A DNA stretch of 64,000 bases, taken from positions 65,534,001-65,598,000 of the forward strand of contig NC_042999.1 of the NCBI RefSeq assembly GCF_006345805.1, read 5' to 3'. The DNA is from Octopus sinensis. Its lineage: Eukaryota. Made by a program: the position numbers and the translations under genes. Below the pieces are notes generated by a model. The model did not search any database and was not told the origin of the DNA. It saw only the letters and a program-made list of their open reading frames with translations. Below, piece after piece: positions 3,110 to 41,090 of this stretch (within the stretch, counting starts at the first letter, position 1; each line of letters starts with the position of its first letter).

Positions 3110-3790
3110 TATCGCCGACTTCCTACGCAACCGCTGAGCTTGGATGCACATTCATCCATCCGTCGATGCTCTCGGTGCCGGGGGTTGATCTGCTCTCTCT
3201 TCTGCGGGTCTTACAAATAGCAAATGACCATGTTTCGGATTCTCCCACATTGGGACGAAGACCGCTTCGCTCAGCAAACAAACAAACAAACAGCAGCAGC
3301 AGCGGTTTCCCGGAGGAACCAGACGCAGCGCCCGGGTCACCTGGCTGCCAACAACTCCAGGAGGTTAAATAACCCCGTTTTCCCCCCAAAACTTTCGAGC
3401 CGTCGTGTTGATTGTCAGAGTGGGATGCATAAATATTCGCGGCCTGAGGTCACCCTGGAAGCAAGTTCGCCTGACCAATGACCTCATGCTAGGTTTCGAT
3501 GTGATAGTAGCCAGTGAAACCAGGATTTCGGACACGCGATCTTGCACCCATTTCGACGATAATGAGATCTACGTATCTCTTAGTCGGCCCGGAACGGGAG
3601 GCGGGATGGCAGTGCTGTTTAGGAAAGGCCTGCATCTCGAATTGCGGACGAACATCCTCGGCCAGGAAGGTAAGTTGGTAGTCCTGGACGTAAGTGAGAG
3701 TGAAGGCGGTACCGATAGAGTAGTCGCTGTTTATGCCCCCATGCGGGCGGAAAGCCAGATTTCTTCAGATATTTGGAAGATTTGGAGGTT
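3110..3790 (+). mobile_element. Tx1/L1-clade LINE fragment: end of ORF1 plus N-terminal APE endonuclease of ORF2, truncated
   Basis: ORF 3405-3854 has APE motifs VGCINIRGL, ASETR, GGGMAVLFRK, GKLVVLDV, RVVAVYAP, then frameshifts to DFFRYLEDL; the upstream ORF ends at TAA 3370-3372. Confidence 0.8.
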
Positions 3791-3924
3791 TTCCTCCTTC
3801 AGTTCAAGATACTTCCCGATTTTCTTGCAATATTCACATCTGTTGGTATGGTGATGTTAATGAGATGATAGTATTTGTCTTTCTTGTTCAATATGTATAT
3901 GCTAGGTCGGCGAAGCTCAATTAG

Positions 3925-7907: not shown

Positions 7908-8289
7908 ACACACACGCTCACACATTCAATATTTGTTAAATCTTGTTCATACAACATCGGAATATCAAAGCTTATTATGAAAAGTTTTATAACCTTTCGG
8001 AATTACAATTTACACAACTTCTAAATTGCCGTTGAAATGCTCTTTCAGTAAACGATTGTCTAAAGTGTCAATAGGACTTTCAGTATGTGATTATGGAATA
8101 TATAGAGGACCCAAAAGCGGAAAAGGAAAAGGCGTCATACGCAAACCCTTTTGTGTCGAGTATACTCGTCACATGAAACACATTGCAGTGACTTGTACAC
8201 AATACAATGACAGAAAATATTACATATATAAGGCGACTCGAAACATACATAGAAACATATATATATATTATATATAATATTATATATAT

Positions 8290-9580
8290 ATATTTCATAT
8301 GTATATATATATATATATAGATTTCATATGTATATATATATAATATATTTTCATATGTATATATATATATATATATTTCATATGTATATATATATATATA
8401 TATATTTCATATGTATATATATATATATATATATTTCATATTATATATATATATATATATATTTCATATGTAATATATATATATATATATATATATCATA
8501 TGTATATATATATATATATATATATAATTTCATATGTATATATATATATATATATATATTTTCATATGTATATATATATATATATATATATTCATATGTA
8601 TATAGATATATATATATATATTTCATATGTATATATATATATATATATATAGTTCATATGTATATATATATAATATATATATATAATTTCATATGTATAT
8701 ATATATATATATATATATTTCATATGTAATATATATATATATATATATATTTCATATGTATATATATATATATATATATTTCATATGTATATATATATAT
8801 ATATATATATTTCATATGTATATATATATATATATATATATATTTCATATGTAGATATATATATATATATATATATTTCATATGTATATATATATATATA
8901 TAATATATTTTCATATGTATATATATATATATATATATATATTTCATATGTAATATATATATATATATATATATATTTTCATATTATATATATATATATA
9001 TATATATATTTCATATGTATATATATATATATATATATATTTCATATGTATATATATATATATATATAATATATAGTTCATATGTATATATAATATATAT
9101 ATATTTCATATGTATATATATAGTATATATATATTTCATATGTATATATATATATATATATATATTCATATGTATATATATATATATATATATTTCATAT
9201 GTATATATATATATATATATATATTCATATGTATATATATATATATATATATATATTTCATATGTATATATTATATATATATATATATATTTTCATATGT
9301 ATCTATATATATATATATATATATAGATATTTCATATGTATATATATATATTATATATATATATTAATATATATATATATATAATATATTTTCATATGTA
9401 TATATATTATATATATTTCATATGTATATATAATATATATATATATTTCATATGTATATATATATATATATAATATATATCTATTTCATATGTATATAAT
9501 ATATATATATATATATATTTCATAGTATATATATATATATATATATTTCATATGTATATATATATATATATATATATTTC

Positions 9581-9612
<32 letters not shown>

Positions 9613-9650
9613 TTCATATGTATAATATATATATATATATATTTCATATG

Positions 9651-9683
<33 letters not shown>

Positions 9684-10539
9684 ATATGTATATATATATA
9701 TATATATATATTTCATATGTAATATATATATATATATATATATATTTCATATGTAGATATATATATAGATATATATATATTATTTCATATGTATATATAT
9801 ATATATATATTTCATATGTATATATATATATATATAGATATTTCATATAGTATATATATATATATATATTTCATATGTATATATATATATATATATATTT
9901 CATATGTATATATATATATATATATATATTTCATATGTATATATATATATATATATATTTCATATGTATATATATATATATATATAATTTCATATGTAAT
10001 ATATATATATATATATATTTCATATGTATATATATTATATATATAATTTCATATATGTATATATAGATATATATATATATATTTCATATGTATATATATA
10101 TATATATTTCATATGTATATATATATATATTTCATATGTATATATATATATATTTTCATATGTATATATATATATATATATATATATTTCATATGTATAT
10201 ATATATATATATATATATATTTCATATGTATTATATATATATATATATTTCATATGTATAATATATATATATATATTTCATATGTATATATATATATATA
10301 TATTTCATATGTATATATATATATTTCATATGTATATATATATATATATTTCATATGTATATATATAATATATATATATTCATATGTATATATATATATA
10401 TATATTATATTCATATGTATATATATTATATATATATATTTTCATATGTATATATATATAATATATATTATTTCATATGTATATATCTATATATATAATA
10501 TTCATATGTATATATATATATATATATATATATTTCATA

Positions 10540-10573
<34 letters not shown>

Positions 10574-10618
10574 TTCATATATGTATATATAATATATATA
10601 TATATAGATATATATTTC

Positions 10619-10660
<42 letters not shown>

Positions 10661-10768
10661 CATATGTATATATATAATATATATAGATATATATAATTTC
10701 AATGTATATATATATATATAGATATATTTTCATATGTATATATATATATATAGATATATATATATTTC

Positions 10769-10800
<32 letters not shown>

Positions 10801-11022
10801 TTCATATGTATAGATATATATATATATATATATATATTTCATATGTATATATATATATAATATATATATATATATTTCATATGTATATATAATATATATA
10901 TATAATATATATATTTCATATGTATATATATATATATATATAATATAATATATTCATATGTATATATATATATATATTATATATTTCATATGTATATATA
11001 TATATATACATATATATATTTC

Positions 11023-11104
<82 letters not shown>

Positions 11105-11115
11105 TTCATATGTAT
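8290..11115. repeat. About 2.8-kb compound satellite with unit TTTCATATG(TA)n, roughly 25-30 bp
   Basis: The tttcatatgtatata motif recurs at near-regular spacing through the interval with variable TA length. Confidence 0.97.
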
Positions 11116-11301
11116 ATATATATATATATATAATATATATATACACACACACAAATATATACATATATAAATATAAAATTATATATATATATATGTATGT
11201 ATAACCTAATATATATGCATATATACACACATATGTATAAGTATATATATGTATGTATGTATAACCTAATATATAGCATATATATACACACATATGTATA
11301 A

Positions 11302-11347
<46 letters not shown>

Positions 11348-11965
11348 TATATTGTCATTCGATGTGGCAGAAATAGCAGCTGTATCGTCCTCTAAATTAC
11401 ATTGTACCGTTTGGCAATTCCAGTAGATATTATACAATGTAGATATGCAATGACTGAGAAACGGTGGGAGTCGACACGGTTCTTTCCATTCATTACTGAC
11501 CTGCAGGGTAAACATCAATAACCGTATTTAAAATGAGGTAATAACCACCACATATCTGTGCGCTATTAATTCTCATAACTACTCAGAAGGTAACATTCTA
11601 CATGTAATAACAGAGTATCTTATTTCATTGAATCTCACACTTATAATGGCTCCTATGTAAAATCAATGCAATATGTATTTATCTATTTATTTATTTATTT
11701 CTATAGCAAATCCAAGGTCACACACAAACTTCTAGGTATAGGTAAATATACAGTTATACACACAAATATTTTCCTATAAGTCTTCGCATGTTTATCGACC
11801 AAATTATCATTATTTTGCTTTTTCTTGTCTATCTATCTACACATCCATTTATTTTTTTATTCCCTCACGCTCTCCCTCTCTCACGTTCCTTCACTCTCTC
11901 TAGCTTTCTCTCTGTATCTATCTAATTATCGTCCTCTTTATGTATGTATATATATATGTGTATGT

Positions 11966-13186: not shown

Positions 13187-13296
13187 GTGTATATATGTAT
13201 ACATATATGTATATATATGTATGTATATGTATATGTATATATATATATGTGTGTATATGTATATATATATATATGTATATATGTATATATATATAT

Positions 13297-13331
<35 letters not shown>

Positions 13332-14640
13332 TATATATATATGTATATATAATATATGTATATATATTATGTATATATATATATATGTATATATATATAA
13401 TATGTATATATATATATATGTATATATATTGTATATATATATATATGTATGTATATATATGTATATATGTATATATATTGTATATGTATATATATGTATA
13501 TATGTATTATATGTATATATATTATATATGTATATATTATGTATATATATATTGTATATATATATATGTATGTATATATATATTGTATATATATATATAT
13601 ATTGTATATGTATATATGATATATGTATATATATATATATATAGTATATATGTATATATAATATATGTATATATATATATGTATATATATATATGTATAT
13701 ATTATGTATATATATATGTGTATATATGTATATGTATGTATATATATATGTGTATATATGTATATTATATATATGTATATATGTATATGTATGTATATAT
13801 ATGTATTGTATATATATATATATGTATATATGTATATATATATATATGTGTATATGTATGTATATATGTATACATATATGTATATATATGTATATGTATA
13901 TATATGTATATGTATATATGTATATGTATAATATGTATATGTATATATGTATATATATATATCTATATGTATATATATTATATATATATGTATATATATA
14001 TATGTATATATATATATATGTATAATATATATATATGTAATATATGTATATATGTATATATGTATCTATATATGTATATATGTATATATGTATATATGTA
14101 TGTATATATGTAGATATGTATATATGTATATATATATATATGATATATGTATATATGTATATTATATATGTATATATGTATCTATGTATATATGTATATA
14201 TGTTATATATATATATATATGTGTATATGTATATATATATATATATGATATATATATATGTGTATATATATAGATATGTATATGTATATATGTATGTATA
14301 TATGTGTATATATGTATATATGTATATATATATATGTATGTATGTATATGTATATATGTGTATATGTATGTATATATGTATATATGTGTATATGTATATA
14401 TGTATGTATATGTATATCTATATACACACACACACATATATATATATATGTATATATATATATATGTATATATGTGTATATGTATGTATTTATTTATGTA
14501 TGTATATGTATATCTATATACACACACACACACACATATATATATGCATATATATATATATATAGACATATGTATATAGATACAGAGAAATAGATGTATA
14601 TGTGTATATATATATATTATATGTGTGTGTGTATATATAT
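13150..14640. repeat. About 1.5-kb degenerate (TATATG)n/(TA)n satellite
   Basis: Directly visible; source of the long Y/I/M/C/V pseudo-ORFs. Confidence 0.95.
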
Positions 14641-15929
14641 ATATATAAGCAGATTCAAATTACCAGGGAGTGGTATGGGAGCATAGCAATTATTGCTGTG
14701 CGTTAGTATGTATATTTGAAACATAAATTAAAATAAAATAAAACACATGCATTCCCATGTATTCCAACATACATAGAATATATCCATATAAATAGGAAAA
14801 AGTAAAATAAAATAAACACCAGTTTTGTCTTGTAATGTGCCTTCACCAGATTCTTAAGCTGCCTCGTTTTACAATATTCAGCTGCTTTCATCATTCAAAC
14901 TTGTTGCAGGAAAATCAATTTGGTTGTTCTTATACGTTATTCTGTATTATTATTCCAATCTTTTCCTATGATGTTTTATGTTTTGTAAATAAATTATTGG
15001 AAGCAGTAATTGCATCAAGTAAAGAAGGACAATTTAAAATTCCATGCCTGCAATCCATGCAAATAAAGTTTAGATCAATATTCGCAACTCTAGAACAAAC
15101 AAATGTTGCCATTTCTCAGACAATCAGGAAGATGCTTCTGTTGTGCAATATGCGTTACGCCCCCATTTTTTTTTTACTGTTTTAATATATATCTTATTTG
15201 AACTGCCATTTGTTGTTGGTGAATTTGTTTGTTTCTCTGAGGCGTGGGAGATAGATAAATCAATAAGATATCGTAATACTAAATCGAAACAGCAGAATCC
15301 GAGATAACGAGTATTGGTCTTTCTCGGTTCTGATAATATATACAGACTTGCTGTGAGAAGTGCGAGCTGATGAGAGATTGTTTGTGAATACTATACGAGT
15401 ATAACGTAATATATACCCTGGTTAGTCCACTCTCATTTGCTCAGTGCATTCAATGCATCATTAAGTAAAATTTACAGCTGCAAGAAGTGGTAGTCCTTTG
15501 AAATTAACTATTGCTAAGTTGGATTGTGTTGCAATAGTCAAGGTTCCATATAGGTCAGGAGAATTTCGCGAGATATTTATCCAATTAATAGTTGTTCACG
15601 TGATAAGAGTTAGCTCATCAATAGTTGATTAAGATTCAATAATCATTTTGTGAAGAAACTAAATTTAATTTTCAGTCGATAAGAAACAAGTGTGTACGTT
15701 AATGACAGTAAAATGTAAAAAGGGGATTCTTAACATCTATTTGTTACATTCCTGCGTGTTAAAGAAGGTAAAATCTAAAAAACAGAGCTTTGTTAACAAC
15801 ATTAAATCCAGGTCTGTACATTAAATTTCTGTCAATTTTAAGGTTACATTCTTAACTACTTTTACATTGTTCATTTATTTGATACTTAGAAATTTCACTG
15901 ACTAACTATATTAATAATAAGGAAAACCG

Positions 15930-15956
15930 AATATATATATATATATATGTTTAAGG

Positions 15957-15988
<32 letters not shown>

Positions 15989-16365
15989 TATATATATATG
16001 TATATAATGTATATATATATGTATATAATGTATATATATATGTATATAATGTGTATATATATATGTATATAATGTATATATATGTATATAATATATATAA
16101 TGTTTATAATGTATATAATGTGTATATAATGTATATGCATATATATATATAATGTGTATATAATGTATATGCATATATATATAAAATGTATATATAATGT
16201 ATATGCATATATATATAATGTATATATAATGTATATGCATATATATATAATGTATATATAATGTATATGCATATGTATAAAATGTATATATAATGTATAT
16301 GCATATATGTATAAAATGTATATATTATGCATATATGTATAAAATGTATATATTATGTATATATA
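15930..16365. repeat. (ATATAATGTAT)-type minisatellite, resuming at 21019-21075 after the LINE insertion
   Basis: Repeated tatataatgtata / aatgtatatgcatata units on both sides of the CR1 element. Confidence 0.85.
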
Positions 16366-16703
16366 CCCTGGTATATATATGTGGATTAACTGTTGAAGTG
16401 GACGGACGTCTATTTGTTTCTCTCCCAAGTCAGCAGCAAGCTACACAGCTTCAAAACTAACTGACCTTAAATATATATATATTTGTAACCACGTGTTTGC
16501 CTACAAACCCGTAAGTACGTTTTCATTTAACTACAAATTGTTATATACAACTGTTTTTCTTTTAATATCCTCAAACAACCAAATAATCAAAAACTCACAC
16601 CCTTAAGAGAGAACATTTATATATATATACACTTCTTTAACTCCCAAGAAAGAATATATATATTTTCAAAATCAAAAGGAAAACAAACAAAAGAAAAACA
16701 AAC

Positions 16704-17922
16704 ATGACTAACTTGCAGGCCTGCAACAGACGAAATTGGTCTGATAACGAAATTGATGTTTTAATAAACACATGGCTCTCTTTCCCAAACAGAAAATCTA
16801 AATGTCTTGTGTTTGAATGAGATTGCCGAAAAAACATCACAAGTGGTCAACACACGATCCGTCAAACAGATTCGTAGCAAGTTGAAACATATCGAAGTAT
16901 CTTTCAAACTGATAAGAGGCCATTATGAAAAGCTTCTACATATTTTCACAGTTCAAGAACAACAACAGCTAGAAAATCAGCAGCCACAACAACAACAACA
17001 ACAGAATGAGCCACTCCTGGTTCCCAGCACAATGGCTGACCCTGACATCGGTCAGGCACAACAACAACAACAGCAACAAGAACAACAACAGCCACTCCTC
17101 AACTCTAGCTTACTAGACGATTCACTAAATGCCAGTATCTTTTCACCGCTCTCACAGCAACCACCACAATTATCATCATCATCATCGCCACCGCTGCCAC
17201 CATCGTCTTCTATCACCAAAAATACCGACAGAAAACCAAATAAGAAACCACTGCCCTCTTCCCCCACATCACCACCTCAATACTACTGCAGTAACAAAAA
17301 CTTAAAGAAACATAGGAAGCAGAATGCGCCCCCCACGGCACAAACAAGAAATCCCCAAATATGTCGCTATTCACTGCGCCAGAGACTCTGCACAAATAGT
17401 GACTGCATCTTCACGCATCTACCCGGCACTAGACGCACTACCGGCCAAGGCCAAAGCACGCATCCCACAATAACATCAACACCACCAAATAGTAAATCGA
17501 AATTCAAAACACACACAACTCGGAGTCCCAAAATCTGCCGGTATTCCCAACGTGAGAGAACATGTCTACTGAGTGACTGTCCCTTCACTCATCTTCCAGG
17601 GACCCGACGCACAAACAGAAACGGGGCCTCAAGCCAACACACAAACCTGAATAACAATAAAAATAGAAACACACCATGCTGCAGTAATGCTGGTCCAGTC
17701 TTTTCAGGAAGACACAAAGACAACAACAACAAAAGTGGAAACTACAACCCTATCCAACAGTGCAACCACACCTCCAGCCAAAAACTGCTCCCTAAGCAGG
17801 AAAATTCTTTTTTAGCCATGTTGAACATGGCAAAAGAGATACACAAAAACATTCTAGCCATCACTCAACACCATCCTATGCTATTACCCCAGTGCACCAA
17901 TTCCCCACATTGCTGCCACTAA
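16704..17922 (+). CDS. LINE ORF1: Myb/SANT-like N-terminus, polyQ and S/P-rich linker, two CCCH zinc fingers, C-terminal helix; one +1 frameshift near 16815
   Basis: ATG 16704 frame reads MTNLQACNRRNWSDNEIDVLINTW...KCLVFE*; the next frame reads NEIAEKTSQVVNTRSVKQIRSKLKHIEVSFK; C-x8-C-x4-C-x3-H at 17362-17418 and 17536-17592. Confidence 0.75.
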
Positions 17923-20900
17923 CACACACAAAAAATCCAAGCCCCCTGCAACAGTCAAAACCAGCCACTACACTAACCTCCACATTCCTACTCAATGCAC
18001 AAGGTGTCAGCCCTTCCATCAATGCACAAAAATGGAAGGTCCAATTCATTGAAGACTGGGTTGGTAACCATTCACACCACATCCCTTTCTTCAATCTCAC
18101 TGAGACCCACCTTGACAACTCCCACTTGGAAGCCGATGTGAGAGTGAAGAATTTCACAACCATCCGCGCGGATCGTATCGGCAGGAGGAAGGGTGGAACT
18201 GCCATTTTCCTGCATGATTCATTTACGGCAGATGGAAATAGTATATTCTCCAATGGCTACTGTGAATCAGTCACCGTGCACAACAAAGCCAATGACCTGA
18301 CAGTAATTGGGCTCTATAGGCCGCCCCAAACACCCATACTGTGCTTTAAAGAATGCCTCAACAGCATTAAGTGCTTTATTCAACAGTGCCATTCTAGCAA
18401 CATACTCATGATGGGAGACTTCAATCTACCCTGTGTTGACTGGACTACAAACTGTTTGAAACCAAGCACTCCCGCCTCAACCGCTGACAAAGAAGCAGCA
18501 GAGTCACTTTTCGACTTTACGAATGAGTTTTTCTTGTCCCAACTTGTCCTTGCACCAACAAGACATCAGAACATTTTGGACCTAGTGTTTAGTAACCACA
18601 CTAACACTATACATAACGTTACAGTGGAAAAATCCCTTCTTTCAGACCATGACATGGTTCTGTGTAACATGAAATTCCACCAGCCGAAAGCTAATCCTAG
18701 TGACCTTCCTCCAGCCCACCCATTTGACAACATGGATCTCCATAAAGCCAACTGGGATGCAATCAGGAACGAGCTATCAAATGTTGACTGGTCCTTTACA
18801 CATACACACATCTCCACCAACCATAAAACATCTTGGCAGATCTTTGTAGACACCGTCACAGACATATGTGCAAAACACTCCCCACCAAGACCTGTGAACA
18901 AAAAGTGCAGAATCCCCCAAAACAGAAAAACTATTATCAGAAAAATAAAAAGAACAAACAAAAAATTAACAAACTAAAGTACTGCCAACAGCAACACACA
19001 CATTCGACGGCTATCGCACTGCTTGAATCCAAAAAATATAACCTCCAACAATGCATGAAGACCCTCATCAATAACCAAAGATCAGCTGAGGAGAAGTGGG
19101 CCATTGAAAAAATCAAACTCAACCCCAAAGTGTTCTTTTCATTTGCGAGGAAACGCAGGGTCACTGTCTCCACTGTAGGGCCTCTAATTGACGAAACTGG
19201 CACTCTCCAAGATAATGCCAAATCCATGGCCGAGATACTGCAGAAACAATACTGCTCTGTTTTCAGCAATCCTGATATGGCCGATCTGGGCTGTATCAGT
19301 GATGTCAACCCCCAACACACTATATCGGACATAACGTTTAGTGCCCCTGATGTCTTAGCGGCGATAAACGAAATAAAACACAATTCAGCAGTAGGCCCCG
19401 ATAGGTTCCCTGCTTGTGTCCTGAAGGTGTGTCGACACCAACTTGCATCTCCCCTTGCTAATCTGTGGAGAAACTCACTGGATGCTGGCTATATTCCAAA
19501 AAACCTTCTGTCCCAGTCTGTTGTCCCAGTTTTCAAAAAGGGAAACAAGCCCCTTGCAGTGAATTACCGTCCGATCTCACTCACCTCTCATATCATCAAG
19601 GTATTTGAGAGGGTGGTGAGATCTCGAATAACCCAATTTCTGGAAAGCAACAGACGGCTGATCTCCAACCAACATGGGTTCCGTAATGGAAGGGACTGCC
19701 TAACGCAGCTCCTGCATCACTTTGAGGACATTTTGAGAGCTTTGGGAGAGGGCTCCAACACCGATGTCATCTACCTTGATTTCAGTAAGGCCTTCGACAG
19801 GGTCGATCACAAGATCCTATTGAAAAAACTATCCAACATTGGTGTCTCTGGAAAGTTACTGAAATGGATTAAGTGTTTCCTGACAGACAGATCTCAACAT
19901 GTTGTAGTTGAAGGGGTAAAATCAAGCCCAGCCAAAGTCAGTAGTGGCGTTCCGCAAGGCACTGTGCTGGGCCCACTTCTTTTCATCATTTACATTAATG
20001 ACATTAATGACATCATCAAGCACAGCAACATAAAAATCTTTGCAGATGACTCCAAGCTACAGAAGGTCATAAATGAGGCGAGTGACCGGACATGCCTTCA
20101 GTCAGATCTACTGGCTGTTATCCAATGGGCAGAAAAAAACAATATGCTGCTGAACGAGGATAAATTTGAGCTAATCCACTTTGGAAAAGAGGATGCCCTG
20201 AAACTCCCATACTCCCTTCCTTCAGGTGAAACTCTCGCGGCGTCCAACAACATCAGAGACTTGGGAGTAATTGTGGACAACAACGTAAGCTGGGCCTCTC
20301 ATATAAACACCAAAGTTGACATGGCCCGCAGAATGTGTTCCTGGATTCTCAGAACTTTCCAGTCGAGAGATATCCACACCATTATCCTTCTCTTCTCCAC
20401 TTTTGCCCGACCCCACCTTGAATACTGTTGTCCACTGTGGTCTCCCCACACAATACAAGGTATCATAAAAGTTGAAGCACATCAAAGGGCAATCACAAAA
20501 AGGATAGATGGCATGACAGGCCTCGACTATTGGGGTCGGCTAGAAAAGCTAAAACTCTATTCTCTCCAACGTCGTCGTGAGCGCTACATCATCTGCATGA
20601 TGTGGAAAATATTCCATCAGCATTGCCCAAATGATGTTGGCATCACCTTTAAGGTACATCCAAGGCTTGGGCCCCGTGCCATCCGCCCAAAACAAAAATC
20701 GCACTCTCATCTCATAACAACAATACGGCACAATTATTTCACCTCAATTGGCCCCGCTCTCTTTAACATTACACCAAAACACATTAAAACAGAAACTGAC
20801 CCTATAGGGTTCAAGAAGTCTTTGGACAGATTCCTTCAAGAAATCCCGGATAAACCCCCTACACCCGGATATGTCTCTGTAAACAATAACTCTATACTTG

Positions 20901-20926
20901 AGTGGGCCATAGTGCCCAAATTCTGA
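17796..20926 (+). CDS. LINE ORF2 (APE endonuclease plus reverse transcriptase), broken by a 1-nt deletion in the A6 run at 18960-18965
   Basis: APE motifs LLNAQG, LTETHL, GGTAIF, YRPP, MGDFN, LDLVF, SDH; RT motifs GPDRFP, NYRPISLTS, QHGFR, LDFSKAFDRV, GVPQGTVLGP, FADD (20039-20050), RPHLEYCCPLWSP, YSLQRRRERY. Confidence 0.93.
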
Positions 20927-21457
20927 CTTGAAAGACTTCACCAGGTGGTGCTATTAAGTTAGACATGGCCTGGGCCAATAATGGCCGAAACCTATCAAAG
21001 TATCAAAGTATCAAAGTATATATATTATGTATATATATATAAAATGTGCATATAATGTATATGTATATATATAGAACATGTATGCGTGTGTGTGTGTCCA
21101 ATGTGCAGAAAACTGATATTATTTTCTGTCAAAATAAATCGTTGAGAACGTTTAAATGGTGAAGCTGCGGATTTTCATTCATATTCTGAAATTGTGTATT
21201 AAATTTTATTACATGGTGTAAATGCAGTGAAACGAAAACTCATAAGAAATGAGCAAAATAAATGTTATAAACAAGCGTGAATATTGCTTTAATACATATG
21301 ATGTAAAGTAATTACTAACAATAATGATCTCTTTACATATCTGGCAGTAGAGCATTACAATGCTGACATGCAATATTGTTGTTAAACAGCAGTTTATGCC
21401 GGCTGTTGCTGGCAAAATTATAGACATGTTAAATAAAGATTTTGGTGTGTTTTACAG

Positions 21458-40610: not shown

Positions 40611-41090
40611 ATAGATTAGATTACTTAGATACGTTTCAGCCGAAGGTGACTCAGGCCATATCTAATTTAATAGCACCACCTGGAAGAGAATCATAGCTCT
40701 GAGGAACTGTAGCTCATTCAAGCAGATGGTTATTGTTTTCAGAGACATATCTGGGTGTGGGTGGTTTATCTGGTATTTGTTGTGGGTAATCATCTAGGGA
40801 TCGTTTGAATGCCGGGAAGTCACTTTCCTCCGTTATGTCTGTCTGGCACGATGTTCATGAGAGCAGGGCCAAATGTGGTGAAATAGTTCTGTCATAGTGT
40901 TGTGATACGACACGGACATTTCTGTAGTGGATGGATGGCACGGGGGCCAAGCCTCGTACGAATTTTAAAGATGGGTAATGTTGATGGAATATTTTCCACA
41001 TCATACAGAATACATAGGGGTCATAGCGGCGGTGGAGGGAGCAAAGCCTCAGCTTTTTGAGTCGATCCAAATAGTCAAAGCTTGTCATGT
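40611..41090 (-). mobile_element. 5'-truncated copy of a CR1 subfamily related to 16366-21018
   Basis: MTSFDYLDRLKKLRLCSLHRRYDPYVFCMMWKIFHQHYP versus MTGLDYWGRLEKLKLYSLQRRRERYIICMMWKIFHQHCP; shared 3' UTR motif ccaggtggtgctattaaRttagaYatggcctg; tail atctaagtaatcta. Confidence 0.9.

What the first reader, a model, noticed from the sequence alone, without database searches (positions are those of the whole stretch)
16704..17922. LINE ORF1 with Myb/SANT-like domain plus tandem CCCH zinc fingers
Repairing one frameshift yields RRNWSDNEIDVLINTW…VFNEIAEK…TRSVKQIRSKLKHIEVSFK, which matches the trihelix/Myb-SANT pattern (W-S/T-xxE-xxx-LI-xx-W … IAE … R-S/T-xx-Q-xx-K). After a polyQ and S/P linker come two C-x8-C-x4-C-x3-H fingers in a 174-nt internal duplication, each followed by LPGTRRT. 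The ORF1 modules I know for CR1-group elements are RRM, PHD, esterase and CCHC knuckles. A DNA-binding Myb/SANT plus RNA-binding CCCH pairing may be an undescribed ORF1 architecture, possibly captured from a Harbinger-type or host protein and possibly involved in target choice.
Basis: partly seen in the sequence, partly recalled or inferred. Interest (0 to 1): 0.82.

Follow-up and report, generated by a model that had tools for sequence, protein, structure and literature searches.

The report
Octopod LINE ORF1 with Myb-like domain
The first gene of a slightly decayed jumping element (a LINE, probably from an octopus-like cephalopod) pairs a Myb/SANT-like helical domain with two RNA-type CCCH zinc fingers; four related elements share this design, I found it in none of the ORF1 surveys I could read, and it is a variant of the known habit of LINEs to swap modules in this gene.

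Summary
Window 16704-17922 (+) is ORF1 of a near full-length LINE (about 16366-21018) of CR1-group appearance. It has an APE+RT ORF2, two 3' hairpins and a (TATCAAAG)x3 tail.

Repaired, residues 9-73 hit Pfam Myb_DNA-bind_4 at 29 bits (cut-off 27). The two unrepaired halves hit the same profile in the expected order, and shuffled controls do not hit it.

The N-terminus is in frame in four other elements: Argonauta hians (intact 407-aa ORF1), two metagenome or SRA contigs, and one further protein. The two C-x8-C-x4-C-x3-H fingers are real. They are 174 nt apart, with 68% nt identity over their cores. A profile of them hits Nab2 CCCH fingers in the PDB (E=1.2e-4).

The finger + 'GTRR' + C-terminal helix module is not peculiar to this element. 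Sister lineages at about 50% ORF2 identity carry it behind a PHD-like finger. So the new feature is a Myb-for-PHD swap at the N-terminus.

Structural support for the Myb fold is weak, no donor gene was found, and a role in target choice is untested. I rate it a new variant of a known kind, of moderate interest.

The parts
16366..16703 (+). 5' UTR of the LINE. The 5' end is approximate and lies directly after a TA-rich microsatellite.
   Evidence: Homology to the 5' UTRs of L011 and L010 (shared AGTCAGCAGCAA block) starts near 16385. The microsatellite ends at 16365.
16704..16778 (+). ORF1 part A (frame 1): M1-L25, holding helix 1 of the Myb/SANT-like domain (RRNWSDNEIDVLINTW).
   Evidence: 13.7 bits to PF13837, profile positions 1-18. 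W12, E16 and W24 are invariant in five homologues.
16778..16779 (+). Frameshift: 2 nt missing relative to L011, inside a CT run.
   Evidence: DNA alignment A4. L011 reads W-F-S-L-S-Q-T-E-D in one frame.
16780..17922 (+). ORF1 part B (frame 2) up to stop TAA 17920-17922.
16728..16920 (+). Myb/SANT-like domain (repaired residues 9-73). A further helix reaches about 16962.
   Evidence: PF13837 at 29.0 bits, E=1.4e-6, cut-off 27. AF2 helices at 14-27, 35-48, 54-73 and 75-87, pLDDT 73.8. pN/pS is about 0.33 against L011.
16954..17092 (+). Two polyQ tracts (16954-17003 and 17058-17092) that begin the low-complexity linker.
   Evidence: TRF. PolyQ also follows the Myb part in L010, L011 and P0125.
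17093..17340 (+). S/P/T-rich and basic linker, presumably disordered.
   Evidence: Translation. The part of the linker that was modelled, from 17314 on, has AF2 pLDDT below 50.
17362..17439 (+). CCCH finger 1 (CRYSLRQRLCTNSDCIFTH) plus LPGTRRT.
   Evidence: Finger profile A7 hits Nab2 chain 4lj0_A at E=1.2e-4.
17536..17613 (+). CCCH finger 2 (CRYSQRERTCLLSDCPFTH) plus LPGTRRT. It is homologous to the third finger of the PHD-type ORF1s.
17806..17856 (+). C-terminal amphipathic helix (SFLAMLNMAKEIHKNIL), shared with PHD-type ORF1s (FLELKRLV...). Likely a self-association element.
   Evidence: AF2 helix with pLDDT 70-81. Aligned in A6.
17892..20926 (+). ORF2: APE-type endonuclease and reverse transcriptase, with one frameshift within 18833-18977.
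   Evidence: Pfam Exo_endo_phos_2 at 8.7e-14 and RVT_1 at 3.5e-31. 7097 homologues.
20942..21018 (+). 3' UTR with two conserved hairpins (about 20942-20986) and the (TATCAAAG)x3 tail (20993-21016).
16347..16365 (.). Candidate target-site duplication TATATATTATGTATATATA (left copy). The right copy is at 21019-21037. It may be no more than the flanking microsatellite.
   Evidence: Read directly.

Best explanation
Window 16704-17922 is ORF1 of a lightly decayed, near full-length non-LTR retrotransposon of CR1-group appearance, probably in an octopod cephalopod genome.

**Shown: the architecture.** ORF1p has four parts:
1. An N-terminal Myb/SANT-like helical domain of about 65 residues.
2. A polyQ and S/P-rich low-complexity linker.
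3. Two Nab2-type CCCH zinc fingers, each followed by a basic GT(R/K)R motif.
4. A short C-terminal amphipathic helix.

Parts 3 and 4 are the conserved core of a wider ORF1 family found in marine invertebrate LINEs. In the sister lineages this core has three CCCH fingers and sits behind an N-terminal helical region and a PHD-like (C4HC3) finger. In the lineage holding the window, L011 and the Argonauta element, a Myb/SANT-like domain replaces that N-terminal block, and the last finger is duplicated.

**Inferred: the mechanism.**
- The CCCH fingers and basic motifs bind the element's single-stranded, A-rich RNA.
- The C-terminal helix and the linker drive self-association into an RNP.
- The N-terminal module (Myb/SANT here, PHD elsewhere) links the RNP to DNA or chromatin at or before target-primed reverse transcription.

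This particular copy cannot make the protein, because ORF1 has a 2-nt deletion and ORF2 has a frameshift.
For: **Myb/SANT-like call**
- PF13837 is the only family reaching significance for the repaired N-terminus: 29.0-31.6 bits against a cut-off of 27.
- All five homologous N-termini hit it, at 33.3, 29.0, 27.1, 16.3 and 13.3 bits.
- The two unrepaired halves hit it in the expected order: profile positions 1-18, then 37-72.
- Ten shuffled or reversed controls gave no Myb hit and nothing above 17 bits.
- The precomputed Pfam record for P0123 also lists PF13837.
- The AF2 model has helices where a three-helix Myb fold needs them, at pLDDT 73.8.

**The N-terminus belongs to ORF1**
- It is in frame in Argonauta L001 (intact 407-aa ORF1; Myb part E=3.7e-10, fingers E=3.7e-14).
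- It is in frame in L011 (48% identity, E=2.8e-22), L010/P0123 and P0125.
- pN/pS is about 0.33 with synonymous sites saturated.

**CCCH fingers**
- The spacing motif occurs twice in the window and nowhere else in it.
- All four metal ligands are invariant in 12 fingers.
- The finger profile hits Nab2, followed by CPSF30 and MBNL chains.

**Shared core with PHD-type ORF1s**.

**ORF1 type tracks ORF2 lineage**: the RT tree split between PHD-type and Myb-type has 88% NJ bootstrap support, and window+L011 has 99%.

**LINE anatomy**. Hairpins plus an octamer tail are a CR1 hallmark according to PMC4316615.
Against: - The Pfam scores sit only just above the cut-off. Two of the five homologues are at noise level taken alone.
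- The N-terminal profile found no Myb, SANT or trihelix chain in the PDB. Its best matches were GCN4-type coiled coils at E>=0.036.
- Foldseek on the AF2 model gave nothing significant. The best hits were homeodomains at E about 4, TM 0.35-0.47.
- Pfam CCCH models stay below their cut-offs (20.9 bits against 25.8).
- AF2 of the C-terminal half has low confidence, pLDDT 45.
- No nucleic-acid binding or targeting function has been tested.
- Repbase and Dfam could not be consulted.
- Clade assignment by RT phylogeny against reference elements was not done.
Confidence: 0.73

Rival explanations
1. The N-terminal region is not a Myb/SANT domain. It is a helical self-association (coiled-coil) module, like the N-terminal coiled coils of L1 and ZfL2-1 ORF1p, and its Pfam match is a borderline coincidence.
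For: - The PDB profile search returns only GCN4-type leucine zippers for positions 54-86, at E=0.036-0.7.
- AF2 predicts a long helix 54-73 continuing to 75-87.
- Foldseek found no Myb fold.
- Coiled coils are common in ORF1ps (PMC3905857).
Against: - Five diverged sequences all pick the same Pfam family in the same register, and three pass the cut-off.
- Shuffled controls never pick it.
- The invariant residues are the Myb signature: W12, W24 and R-S-x2-Q-I-x2-K. They do not form a heptad pattern.
- The coiled-coil hits are not significant, and they cover only the last helices, which may extend beyond the domain.
Confidence: 0.15
2. The Myb segment is foreign to the element: a host exon, a neighbouring gene fragment or another transposon lying next to a 5'-truncated LINE. 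Under this reading the apparent fusion exists only because of the frameshift 'repair'.
For: - This copy does need a frame repair.
- The first database search with the repaired protein found nothing.
Against: - The same N-terminus is joined in frame to the same linker, fingers and C-terminus upstream of a related ORF2 in Argonauta (intact), L011 and L010.
- The 5' UTR upstream of the ATG is also homologous between copies.
- The DNA alignment pins the frameshift to a simple 2-nt gap.
Confidence: 0.02
3. The Myb/SANT-like domain is a sequence-specific DNA-targeting module, recently captured from a Harbinger-type or host Myb protein, that steers integration into TA-rich microsatellites.
For: - Both full-length Myb-type copies whose two flanks can be read lie inside TA-rich microsatellite arrays (window: 15929-16365 and 21017-21085; Argonauta L001: 2744-3185 and 8311-9410).
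- Such arrays cover only about 10% of the window.
- Myb domains do guide R2 and TRAS/SART elements; this rests on established knowledge and was not tested here.
Against: - The sample is two copies.
- The 5'-truncated relative at 41089-40622 is not in a microsatellite.
- The sequences upstream of L010 and L011 are not TA arrays.
- The PHD-type relatives L007 and L008 sit in (TG)n arrays that continue their own tail ends. Pairing between tail and target, or endonuclease preference, therefore explains microsatellite insertion without any Myb domain.
- No Harbinger or host donor was found among 1.84 billion proteins.
Confidence: 0.1

Closest known systems
Type III (PHD-containing) ORF1 of CR1/L2-group LINEs (Kapitonov & Jurka 2003; Khazina & Weichenrieder 2009; Metcalfe & Casane 2014, PMC4120745)
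   Same: - Same kind of element: APE+RT ORF2 with a hairpin and short-repeat tail.
- The nearest ORF2 relatives found here (48-56% identity) carry a PHD-like C4HC3 finger in ORF1.
- The window's fingers, GTRR motif and C-terminal helix are homologous to theirs.
- An N-terminal chromatin or DNA module ahead of a nucleic-acid-binding part is the same logic; PMC4120745 suggests that the PHD helps general targeting.
   Different: - There is no PHD finger. A Myb/SANT-like domain takes its place.
- There are two CCCH fingers instead of three.
- The published descriptions I could read mention neither CCCH fingers nor Myb in these ORF1s.
Myb domains of site-specific LINEs: the N-terminal zinc-finger + Myb of R2, and the Myb-like domain of TRAS/SART (R1 clade) ORF2
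   Same: A Myb-type helix-turn-helix domain encoded by a non-LTR retrotransposon. In those elements it binds the target DNA (established knowledge; the R2 review PMC12203849 was listed).
   Different: - Those domains lie in the RT-containing protein (the single ORF or ORF2), not in ORF1.
- They belong to other clades (R2, R1).
- No sequence similarity to them was found here.
- DNA binding by the present domain is untested.
Myb/SANT-like DNA-binding domain family PF13837 (plant trihelix GT factors, animal MSANTD proteins, Harbinger-associated Myb-like proteins)
   Same: Profile match above Pfam's cut-off, with the W...W...R-[ST]-x2-Q-x3-K signature and a long third helix.
   Different: - It is very diverged.
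- No individual cellular or transposase-associated relative was detectable.
- No PDB relative was found by sequence or by fold.
Nab2/ZC3H14-type tandem CCCH zinc fingers (polyadenosine-RNA binding)
   Same: - C-x(n)-C-x4-5-C-x3-H ligands arranged in tandem.
- The finger profile hits Chaetomium Nab2 chain 4lj0_A at E=1.2e-4, and Pfam zf-CCCH_2 at E=5e-4.
   Different: - The first spacer is longer (x8 against x5).
- The fingers are separated by about 40 residues rather than packed together.
- A conserved [LI]-x-G-T-[RK]-R extension follows each finger.
- The match is below Pfam's cut-off.
- RNA specificity is unknown.
Jockey/I-type ORF1 (RRM + CCHC knuckles) and L1-type ORF1 (coiled coil + RRM + CTD)
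   Same: Presumed role: a multimeric RNA-binding chaperone that packages the element's RNA.
   Different: No RRM, CCHC knuckle, Transposase_22 or esterase domain was detected.

Membership tests
Myb/SANT-like DNA-binding domain (Pfam PF13837, Myb_DNA-bind_4) | Profile HMM score at or above the curated gathering cut-off (27 bits) | tested here: met
   Window (repaired) scores 29.0-31.6 bits, L010/P0123 33.3 and L011 27.1. P0125 (16.3) and Argonauta (13.3) fall below it. Shuffled controls gave no hit.
Myb/SANT-like DNA-binding domain (Pfam PF13837, Myb_DNA-bind_4) | Three-helix helix-turn-helix fold | tested here: inconclusive
   AF2 places helices at 14-27, 35-48 and 54-73 (pLDDT 73.8). Foldseek against the PDB found no significant match; the best hits were homeodomains at E about 4.
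Myb/SANT-like DNA-binding domain (Pfam PF13837, Myb_DNA-bind_4) | Conserved aromatic core residues and the basic recognition-helix signature | tested here: met
   W12, E16, W24, R52, Q56, I57, K60 and I64 are invariant in five sequences that are 33-52% identical to the window's.
Myb/SANT-like DNA-binding domain (Pfam PF13837, Myb_DNA-bind_4) | Binds DNA (or histone tails, for SANT) | not testable with these tools
   Needs a gel-shift or pull-down experiment with the purified domain.
CCCH (C3H1) zinc finger, Nab2 type | Ligand spacing C-x6-14-C-x4-5-C-x3-H, with the ligands conserved | tested here: met
   Both fingers are C-x8-C-x4-C-x3-H. C7, C16, C21 and H25 are invariant in 12 fingers from 10 elements.
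CCCH (C3H1) zinc finger, Nab2 type | Significant profile similarity to known CCCH fingers | tested here: inconclusive
   The PDB profile search hits Nab2 chain 4lj0_A at E=1.2e-4, and the next hits are all CCCH proteins. Pfam zf-CCCH_2 gives 20.9 bits, below its cut-off of 25.8.
CCCH (C3H1) zinc finger, Nab2 type | Zinc-dependent fold that binds single-stranded RNA | not testable with these tools
   AF2 confidence over the fingers is only 54-57.
CR1-group LINE (CR1, L2, Rex1, Daphne, Crack, Kiri) | ORF2 with an APE-type endonuclease and RT, and no RNase H | tested here: met
   Pfam finds Exo_endo_phos_2 and RVT_1 and no other domain.
CR1-group LINE (CR1, L2, Rex1, Daphne, Crack, Kiri) | 3' UTR hairpin followed by a short (octamer) tandem repeat instead of poly(A) | tested here: met
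   Two conserved hairpins, one of them with a compensatory pair, followed by (TATCWAAG)x3 in the window, in Argonauta and in the fragment at 40622. The feature is as described in PMC4316615.
CR1-group LINE (CR1, L2, Rex1, Daphne, Crack, Kiri) | RT domain groups with reference CR1-group elements in a phylogeny | not tested
   No Repbase or Dfam reference sequences were available. Only relatives from metagenomes and Argonauta were compared.
Type III (PHD) ORF1 | PHD (C4HC3) finger in ORF1 | tested here: not met
   The window and Argonauta ORF1s have no C4HC3 motif. It is present by pattern in L002, L003, L007, L008, L012, L015 and P0128.

The most novel reading that the evidence does not exclude
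ORF1p, rather than ORF2p, supplies a DNA-recognition module in an APE-type LINE. The Myb/SANT-like domain would bind TA-rich microsatellite DNA (or its chromatin) and bias integration there. Swapping PHD for Myb in the N-terminal slot would then have retargeted a whole LINE lineage in octopods. The Nab2-type CCCH module would, in addition, define an undescribed ORF1 class that is widespread in marine invertebrates.
Probability: 0.1. Interest if true: 0.7.

Novelty: new variant of a known kind. Interest (0 to 1): 0.42.

Why it matters
ORF1 proteins are the least understood part of LINEs. The current classification has five types: RRM+CCHC, L1-like, PHD, esterase and 'unclassified'. Recent work stresses that ORF1 modules turn over between lineages.

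This finding adds a concrete, conserved example of such turnover. The shared core is made of Nab2-like CCCH fingers rather than an RRM or CCHC knuckles, and the N-terminal slot holds either a PHD-like finger or a Myb/SANT-like domain. That gives a natural pair of sister lineages in which to ask what the N-terminal module does: chromatin tethering, nuclear entry or target choice.

Cephalopod genomes are rich in repeats and their LINEs are of interest for neural genome plasticity, so a defined family is useful for annotation. The result does not overturn any principle, and the function remains inferred.

Tried and rejected
**Searches and models that led nowhere**
- Word-indexed protein search with the whole repaired ORF1: no hit.
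- The same search with the Myb alignment: it returned only the two sequences already in the alignment.
- PDB sequence-profile search with the Myb alignment: only non-significant coiled-coil hits.
- Foldseek of the AF2 Myb model against the PDB: nothing significant.
- AF2 of the finger and C-terminal half: pLDDT 45, so I did not use it for a fold search.
- Ka/Ks: synonymous sites are saturated, so only the ratio pN/pS could be used.
- Literature: the surveys I could read (PMC4120745, PMC13343379, PMC5203782, PMC11203168) do not mention Myb, SANT or CCCH in LINE ORF1. Four full-text searches found no such report. Kapitonov & Jurka 2003 and Khazina & Weichenrieder 2009 are not held.

**Ideas rejected**
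- The Myb segment being foreign to the element.
- The finger duplication being recent or specific to this copy; Argonauta has both fingers.

**Ideas not supported**
- A Harbinger or host donor.

**Left open**
- L010, where a Myb-type ORF1 is followed by an unrelated ORF2.
Full report
**1. What is at the coordinates**

Window 16704-17922 (+) lies in a 64-kb, 32.7% G+C stretch rich in TA microsatellites.

An ATG at 16704 opens frame 1 (MTNLQACNRRNWSDNEIDVLINTW...), which stops at 16818-16820. Frame 2 is open from before 16777 to TAA 17920-17922 and reads ...SLSQTENLNVLCLNEIAEKTSQVVNTRSVKQIRSKLKHIEVSFK... After that come polyQ tracts, an S/P-rich linker, two CCCH motifs and a C-terminal tail.

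Directly downstream is an ORF2 (17892-20926, one frameshift within 18833-18977). It carries an APE-type endonuclease (Exo_endo_phos_2, 8.7e-14) and a reverse transcriptase (RVT_1, 3.5e-31).

After the ORF2 stop come a conserved 3' UTR that folds into two hairpins and a (TATCAAAG)x3 tail at 20993-21016. A hairpin plus an octamer repeat is described as a hallmark of CR1 3' ends (PMC4316615).

The finding is therefore ORF1 of a near full-length LINE, about 16366-21018, with two inactivating frameshifts.

**2. Checking the observation**

- *Fingers.* The two C-x8-C-x4-C-x3-H motifs start at 17362 and 17536, 174 nt apart, and each is followed by LPGTRRT. They are the only two matches in the six-frame translation of the window, and 30 shuffles gave none.
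- *Duplication.* At offset 174 the 91-nt cores are 68% identical, against 27 +/- 5% for other in-frame offsets. The internal duplication is real but old.
- *PolyQ.* The tracts are at 16954-17003 and 17058-17092.
The closest relative, L011 (RT 71-75% identical), reads NWSDSEIDMLINAWFSLSQTEDVYTPCLNHVAKRT in one frame. The DNA alignment shows a 2-nt gap in the window between 16778 and 16779, within a CT run.

**3. Is the N-terminus Myb/SANT-like?**

Evidence for:
- The repaired residues 9-73 hit Pfam PF13837 (Myb_DNA-bind_4) at 29.0 bits with the correct repair and 31.6 bits with my first one. The cut-off is 27.
- Without any repair, the two halves each hit the same model in the expected order: 13.7 bits to profile positions 1-18 and 14.1 bits to positions 37-72.
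- Four homologous N-termini from other elements hit the same family in the same register, at 33.3, 27.1, 16.3 and 13.3 bits.
- Ten shuffled or reversed controls never hit it, and their best random hits score 12-17 bits.
- Invariant residues across the five sequences (33-52% identical to the window's) are W12, E16, W24, R52, Q56, I57, K60, I64 and H74. This is the W...W...R-S-x2-Q-I-x2-K signature.
- An AF2 model built from a three-sequence alignment has pLDDT 73.8 and helices at 14-27, 35-48, 54-73 and 75-87.

Evidence against:
- Foldseek against the PDB gave no significant match. The best hits were homeodomains at E about 4.
- A profile search of PDB sequences gave only non-significant GCN4-type coiled-coil hits over the last helices.

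I conclude that the Myb/SANT-like assignment is supported at the sequence-profile level and is not confirmed structurally.

**4. Does it belong to the element?**

Yes.
- ORF2 has 7097 homologues, and the one named is from Argonauta hians.
- In the Argonauta locus L001, an intact 407-aa ORF1 lies upstream of the related ORF2. It has the same order of parts: Myb-like N-terminus (36.6% identity, E=3.7e-10), low-complexity linker, two CCCH fingers with GT(K/R)R (44.7% identity, E=3.7e-14) and a C-terminal helix.
- An exhaustive HMMER search of 1.84 billion representative proteins with the repaired ORF1 gave eight hits. Two are in-frame Myb-like N-termini followed by polyQ (P0123, P0125). Two are finger/C-terminal fragments (P0121, P0122). 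Four are PHD-type ORF1s (see section 5).
- The contigs of P0123 (L010) and P0121 (L011) carry Myb part, fingers and C-terminus upstream of an ORF2.
- The 5' UTRs share sequence blocks.
- Between the window and L011 the Myb part has pN=0.26 against pS=0.79, with synonymous sites saturated, which indicates purifying selection.

**5. The CCCH module is the family core; the Myb part is the novelty**

ORF2 relatives at about 48-56% identity from marine and other metagenomes (L002, L003-6, L007, L008/9, L012, L015), together with P0124 and P0126-P0128, encode ORF1s of 420-500 aa. These have:
- an N-terminal helical region;
- a PHD-like C4HC3 motif (identified by pattern only; Pfam did not call it);
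- three CCCH fingers;
- a C-terminal helix.

Their third finger, for example LCKFSVKKKLCTNSDCTFIHLKGTRRKE, aligns with the window's fingers. In an alignment of 12 fingers, P4, C7, C16, C21, H25 and G28 are invariant and T29 and R31 nearly so. The C-terminal helix also aligns (FLELKRLV... with FLAMLNMA...).

A profile of the 12 fingers hits Nab2 tandem CCCH fingers in the PDB (4lj0_A, E=1.2e-4). The weaker hits that follow are CPSF30 and MBNL chains. Pfam zf-CCCH_2 reaches 20.9 bits, below its cut-off of 25.8.

A neighbour-joining tree of 372 RT residues pairs the window with L011 (99% bootstrap) and separates the PHD-type elements from the Myb-type ones (88%). ORF1 type therefore follows ORF2 lineage.

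The simplest history is that the N-terminal helical+PHD block was replaced by a Myb/SANT-like domain and the last finger was duplicated, in a lineage present at least in octopods.

**6. How it probably works (inference)**

I reason by analogy with other ORF1ps and with Nab2-type fingers:
- The CCCH fingers and the adjacent basic GT(R/K)R motifs bind the element's single-stranded, A-rich RNA.
- The C-terminal helix (AF2 pLDDT 70-81) and the polyQ/S/P linker promote self-association into an RNP.
- The N-terminal slot, Myb/SANT here and PHD in the sister lineages, most plausibly contacts DNA or chromatin. PMC4120745 proposed a general targeting role for the PHD.

None of this was tested.

**7. 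Target choice**

Observations that suggest a preference:
- The window copy sits inside a TA-rich array (15929-16365 upstream, 21017-21085 downstream).
- It has an identical 19-mer on both sides (16347-16365 and 21019-21037), which could be a target-site duplication or just the repeat.
- The Argonauta copy is also flanked on both sides by TA/AAAT arrays.
- Such arrays cover about 10% of the window.

Observations that weaken a Myb-directed explanation:
- The truncated relative at 41089-40622(-) is not in an array.
- The sequences upstream of L010 and L011 are not TA arrays.
- The PHD-type elements L007 and L008 end in ...AGG followed by (TG)n, and L008 also has (TG)n at its 5' side.

Microsatellite insertion is thus not tied to the Myb domain. 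Pairing between the tail end and the nicked target, or endonuclease preference, accounts for it more simply. I give Myb-directed targeting about 10%.

**8. Origin of the Myb part**

No cellular or Harbinger-associated relative reached E<=1e-3 among 1.84 billion representatives. Capture remains an idea without evidence.

**9. Comparison with what is known**

- The ORF1 surveys I could read list RRM, CCHC, Transposase_22, PHD, esterase, and zinc-finger/leucine-zipper modules. They do not mention Myb, SANT or CCCH (PMC4120745; PMC13343379; PMC5203782).
- PMC5203782 does report an HTH_1 match in the ORF1 of Coccomyxa L1/Zepp, so a helix-turn-helix call in an ORF1 has one precedent.
- Myb domains are known in R2 and in TRAS/SART elements, but there they sit in the RT-bearing protein.
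- Modular turnover of ORF1 is well established (PMC4120745, PMC13343379).

I therefore rate the finding a new variant of a known kind. Repbase and Dfam could not be checked, and two key older papers are not held.

**10. Verdict**

The architecture is real, conserved and apparently undescribed. Only the Myb-for-PHD swap is lineage-specific, the structural evidence for the Myb fold is weak, and both capture and targeting are unsupported. Interest is moderate (0.42).

Noticed in passing
window 15929-16365 and 21017-21085; L001 2744-3185 and 8311-9410: Both full-length Myb-type copies lie inside TA-rich microsatellite arrays. The window copy has an identical 19-mer, TATATATTATGTATATATA, at 16347-16365 and 21019-21037, which is a candidate target-site duplication. 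TA arrays cover about 10% of the window.
   Followed up: partly
L007 3' end; L008 1-60 and 3' end; L009 3' end: PHD-type relatives end in (AATCAYAGG)x2 running straight into (TG)n, and L008 also has (TG)n on its 5' side. This LINE group may insert into microsatellites that match the end of its own tail.
   Followed up: partly
L010 354-4563 (Logan SRR29346471 contig): A Myb-type ORF1 (Myb part, one finger, C-terminus) is followed within about 100 nt by an ORF2 of a different LINE lineage, only 31-34% identical to the window's RT. This could be a nested insertion, an assembly chimera or an ORF1 that moved between lineages. One contig cannot decide.
   Followed up: partly
window 40622-41089 (-): A 5'-truncated copy of a related LINE family (69% nt identity to the window element's 3' part). 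It has the same conserved 3' UTR block and a decayed TATCTAAG tail, and it is not in a microsatellite.
   Followed up: partly
window 20942-20986; L001 about 8236-8282: The 3' UTR block CAGGTGGTGCTATTA(A/G)GTTAG(A/C)CATGGCCTGGGCC...GGCCGAAAC is conserved between the window, the Argonauta element and the fragment at 40622. It folds into two hairpins, one with a compensatory G-C to A-U change. It is probably the RT recognition element.
   Followed up: partly
window 17892-17922: The ORF2 frame opens about 30 nt before the ORF1 stop and has no nearby ATG; the first start codon under the bacterial table is GTG. The Argonauta element also lacks an ATG there. ORF2 translation is probably unconventional (reinitiation or similar).
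   Followed up: no
window 3405-3854 (+): A 149-aa ORF begins ...INIRGLRSPWKQ... and resembles the N-terminus of an APE-type endonuclease of yet another LINE.
   Followed up: no
window 8245-11363, 13252-14277 and others: Very long TA/TATG-type microsatellite arrays, up to about 2.9 kb. They give rise to many spurious Y/I-rich ORFs on both strands.
   Followed up: no
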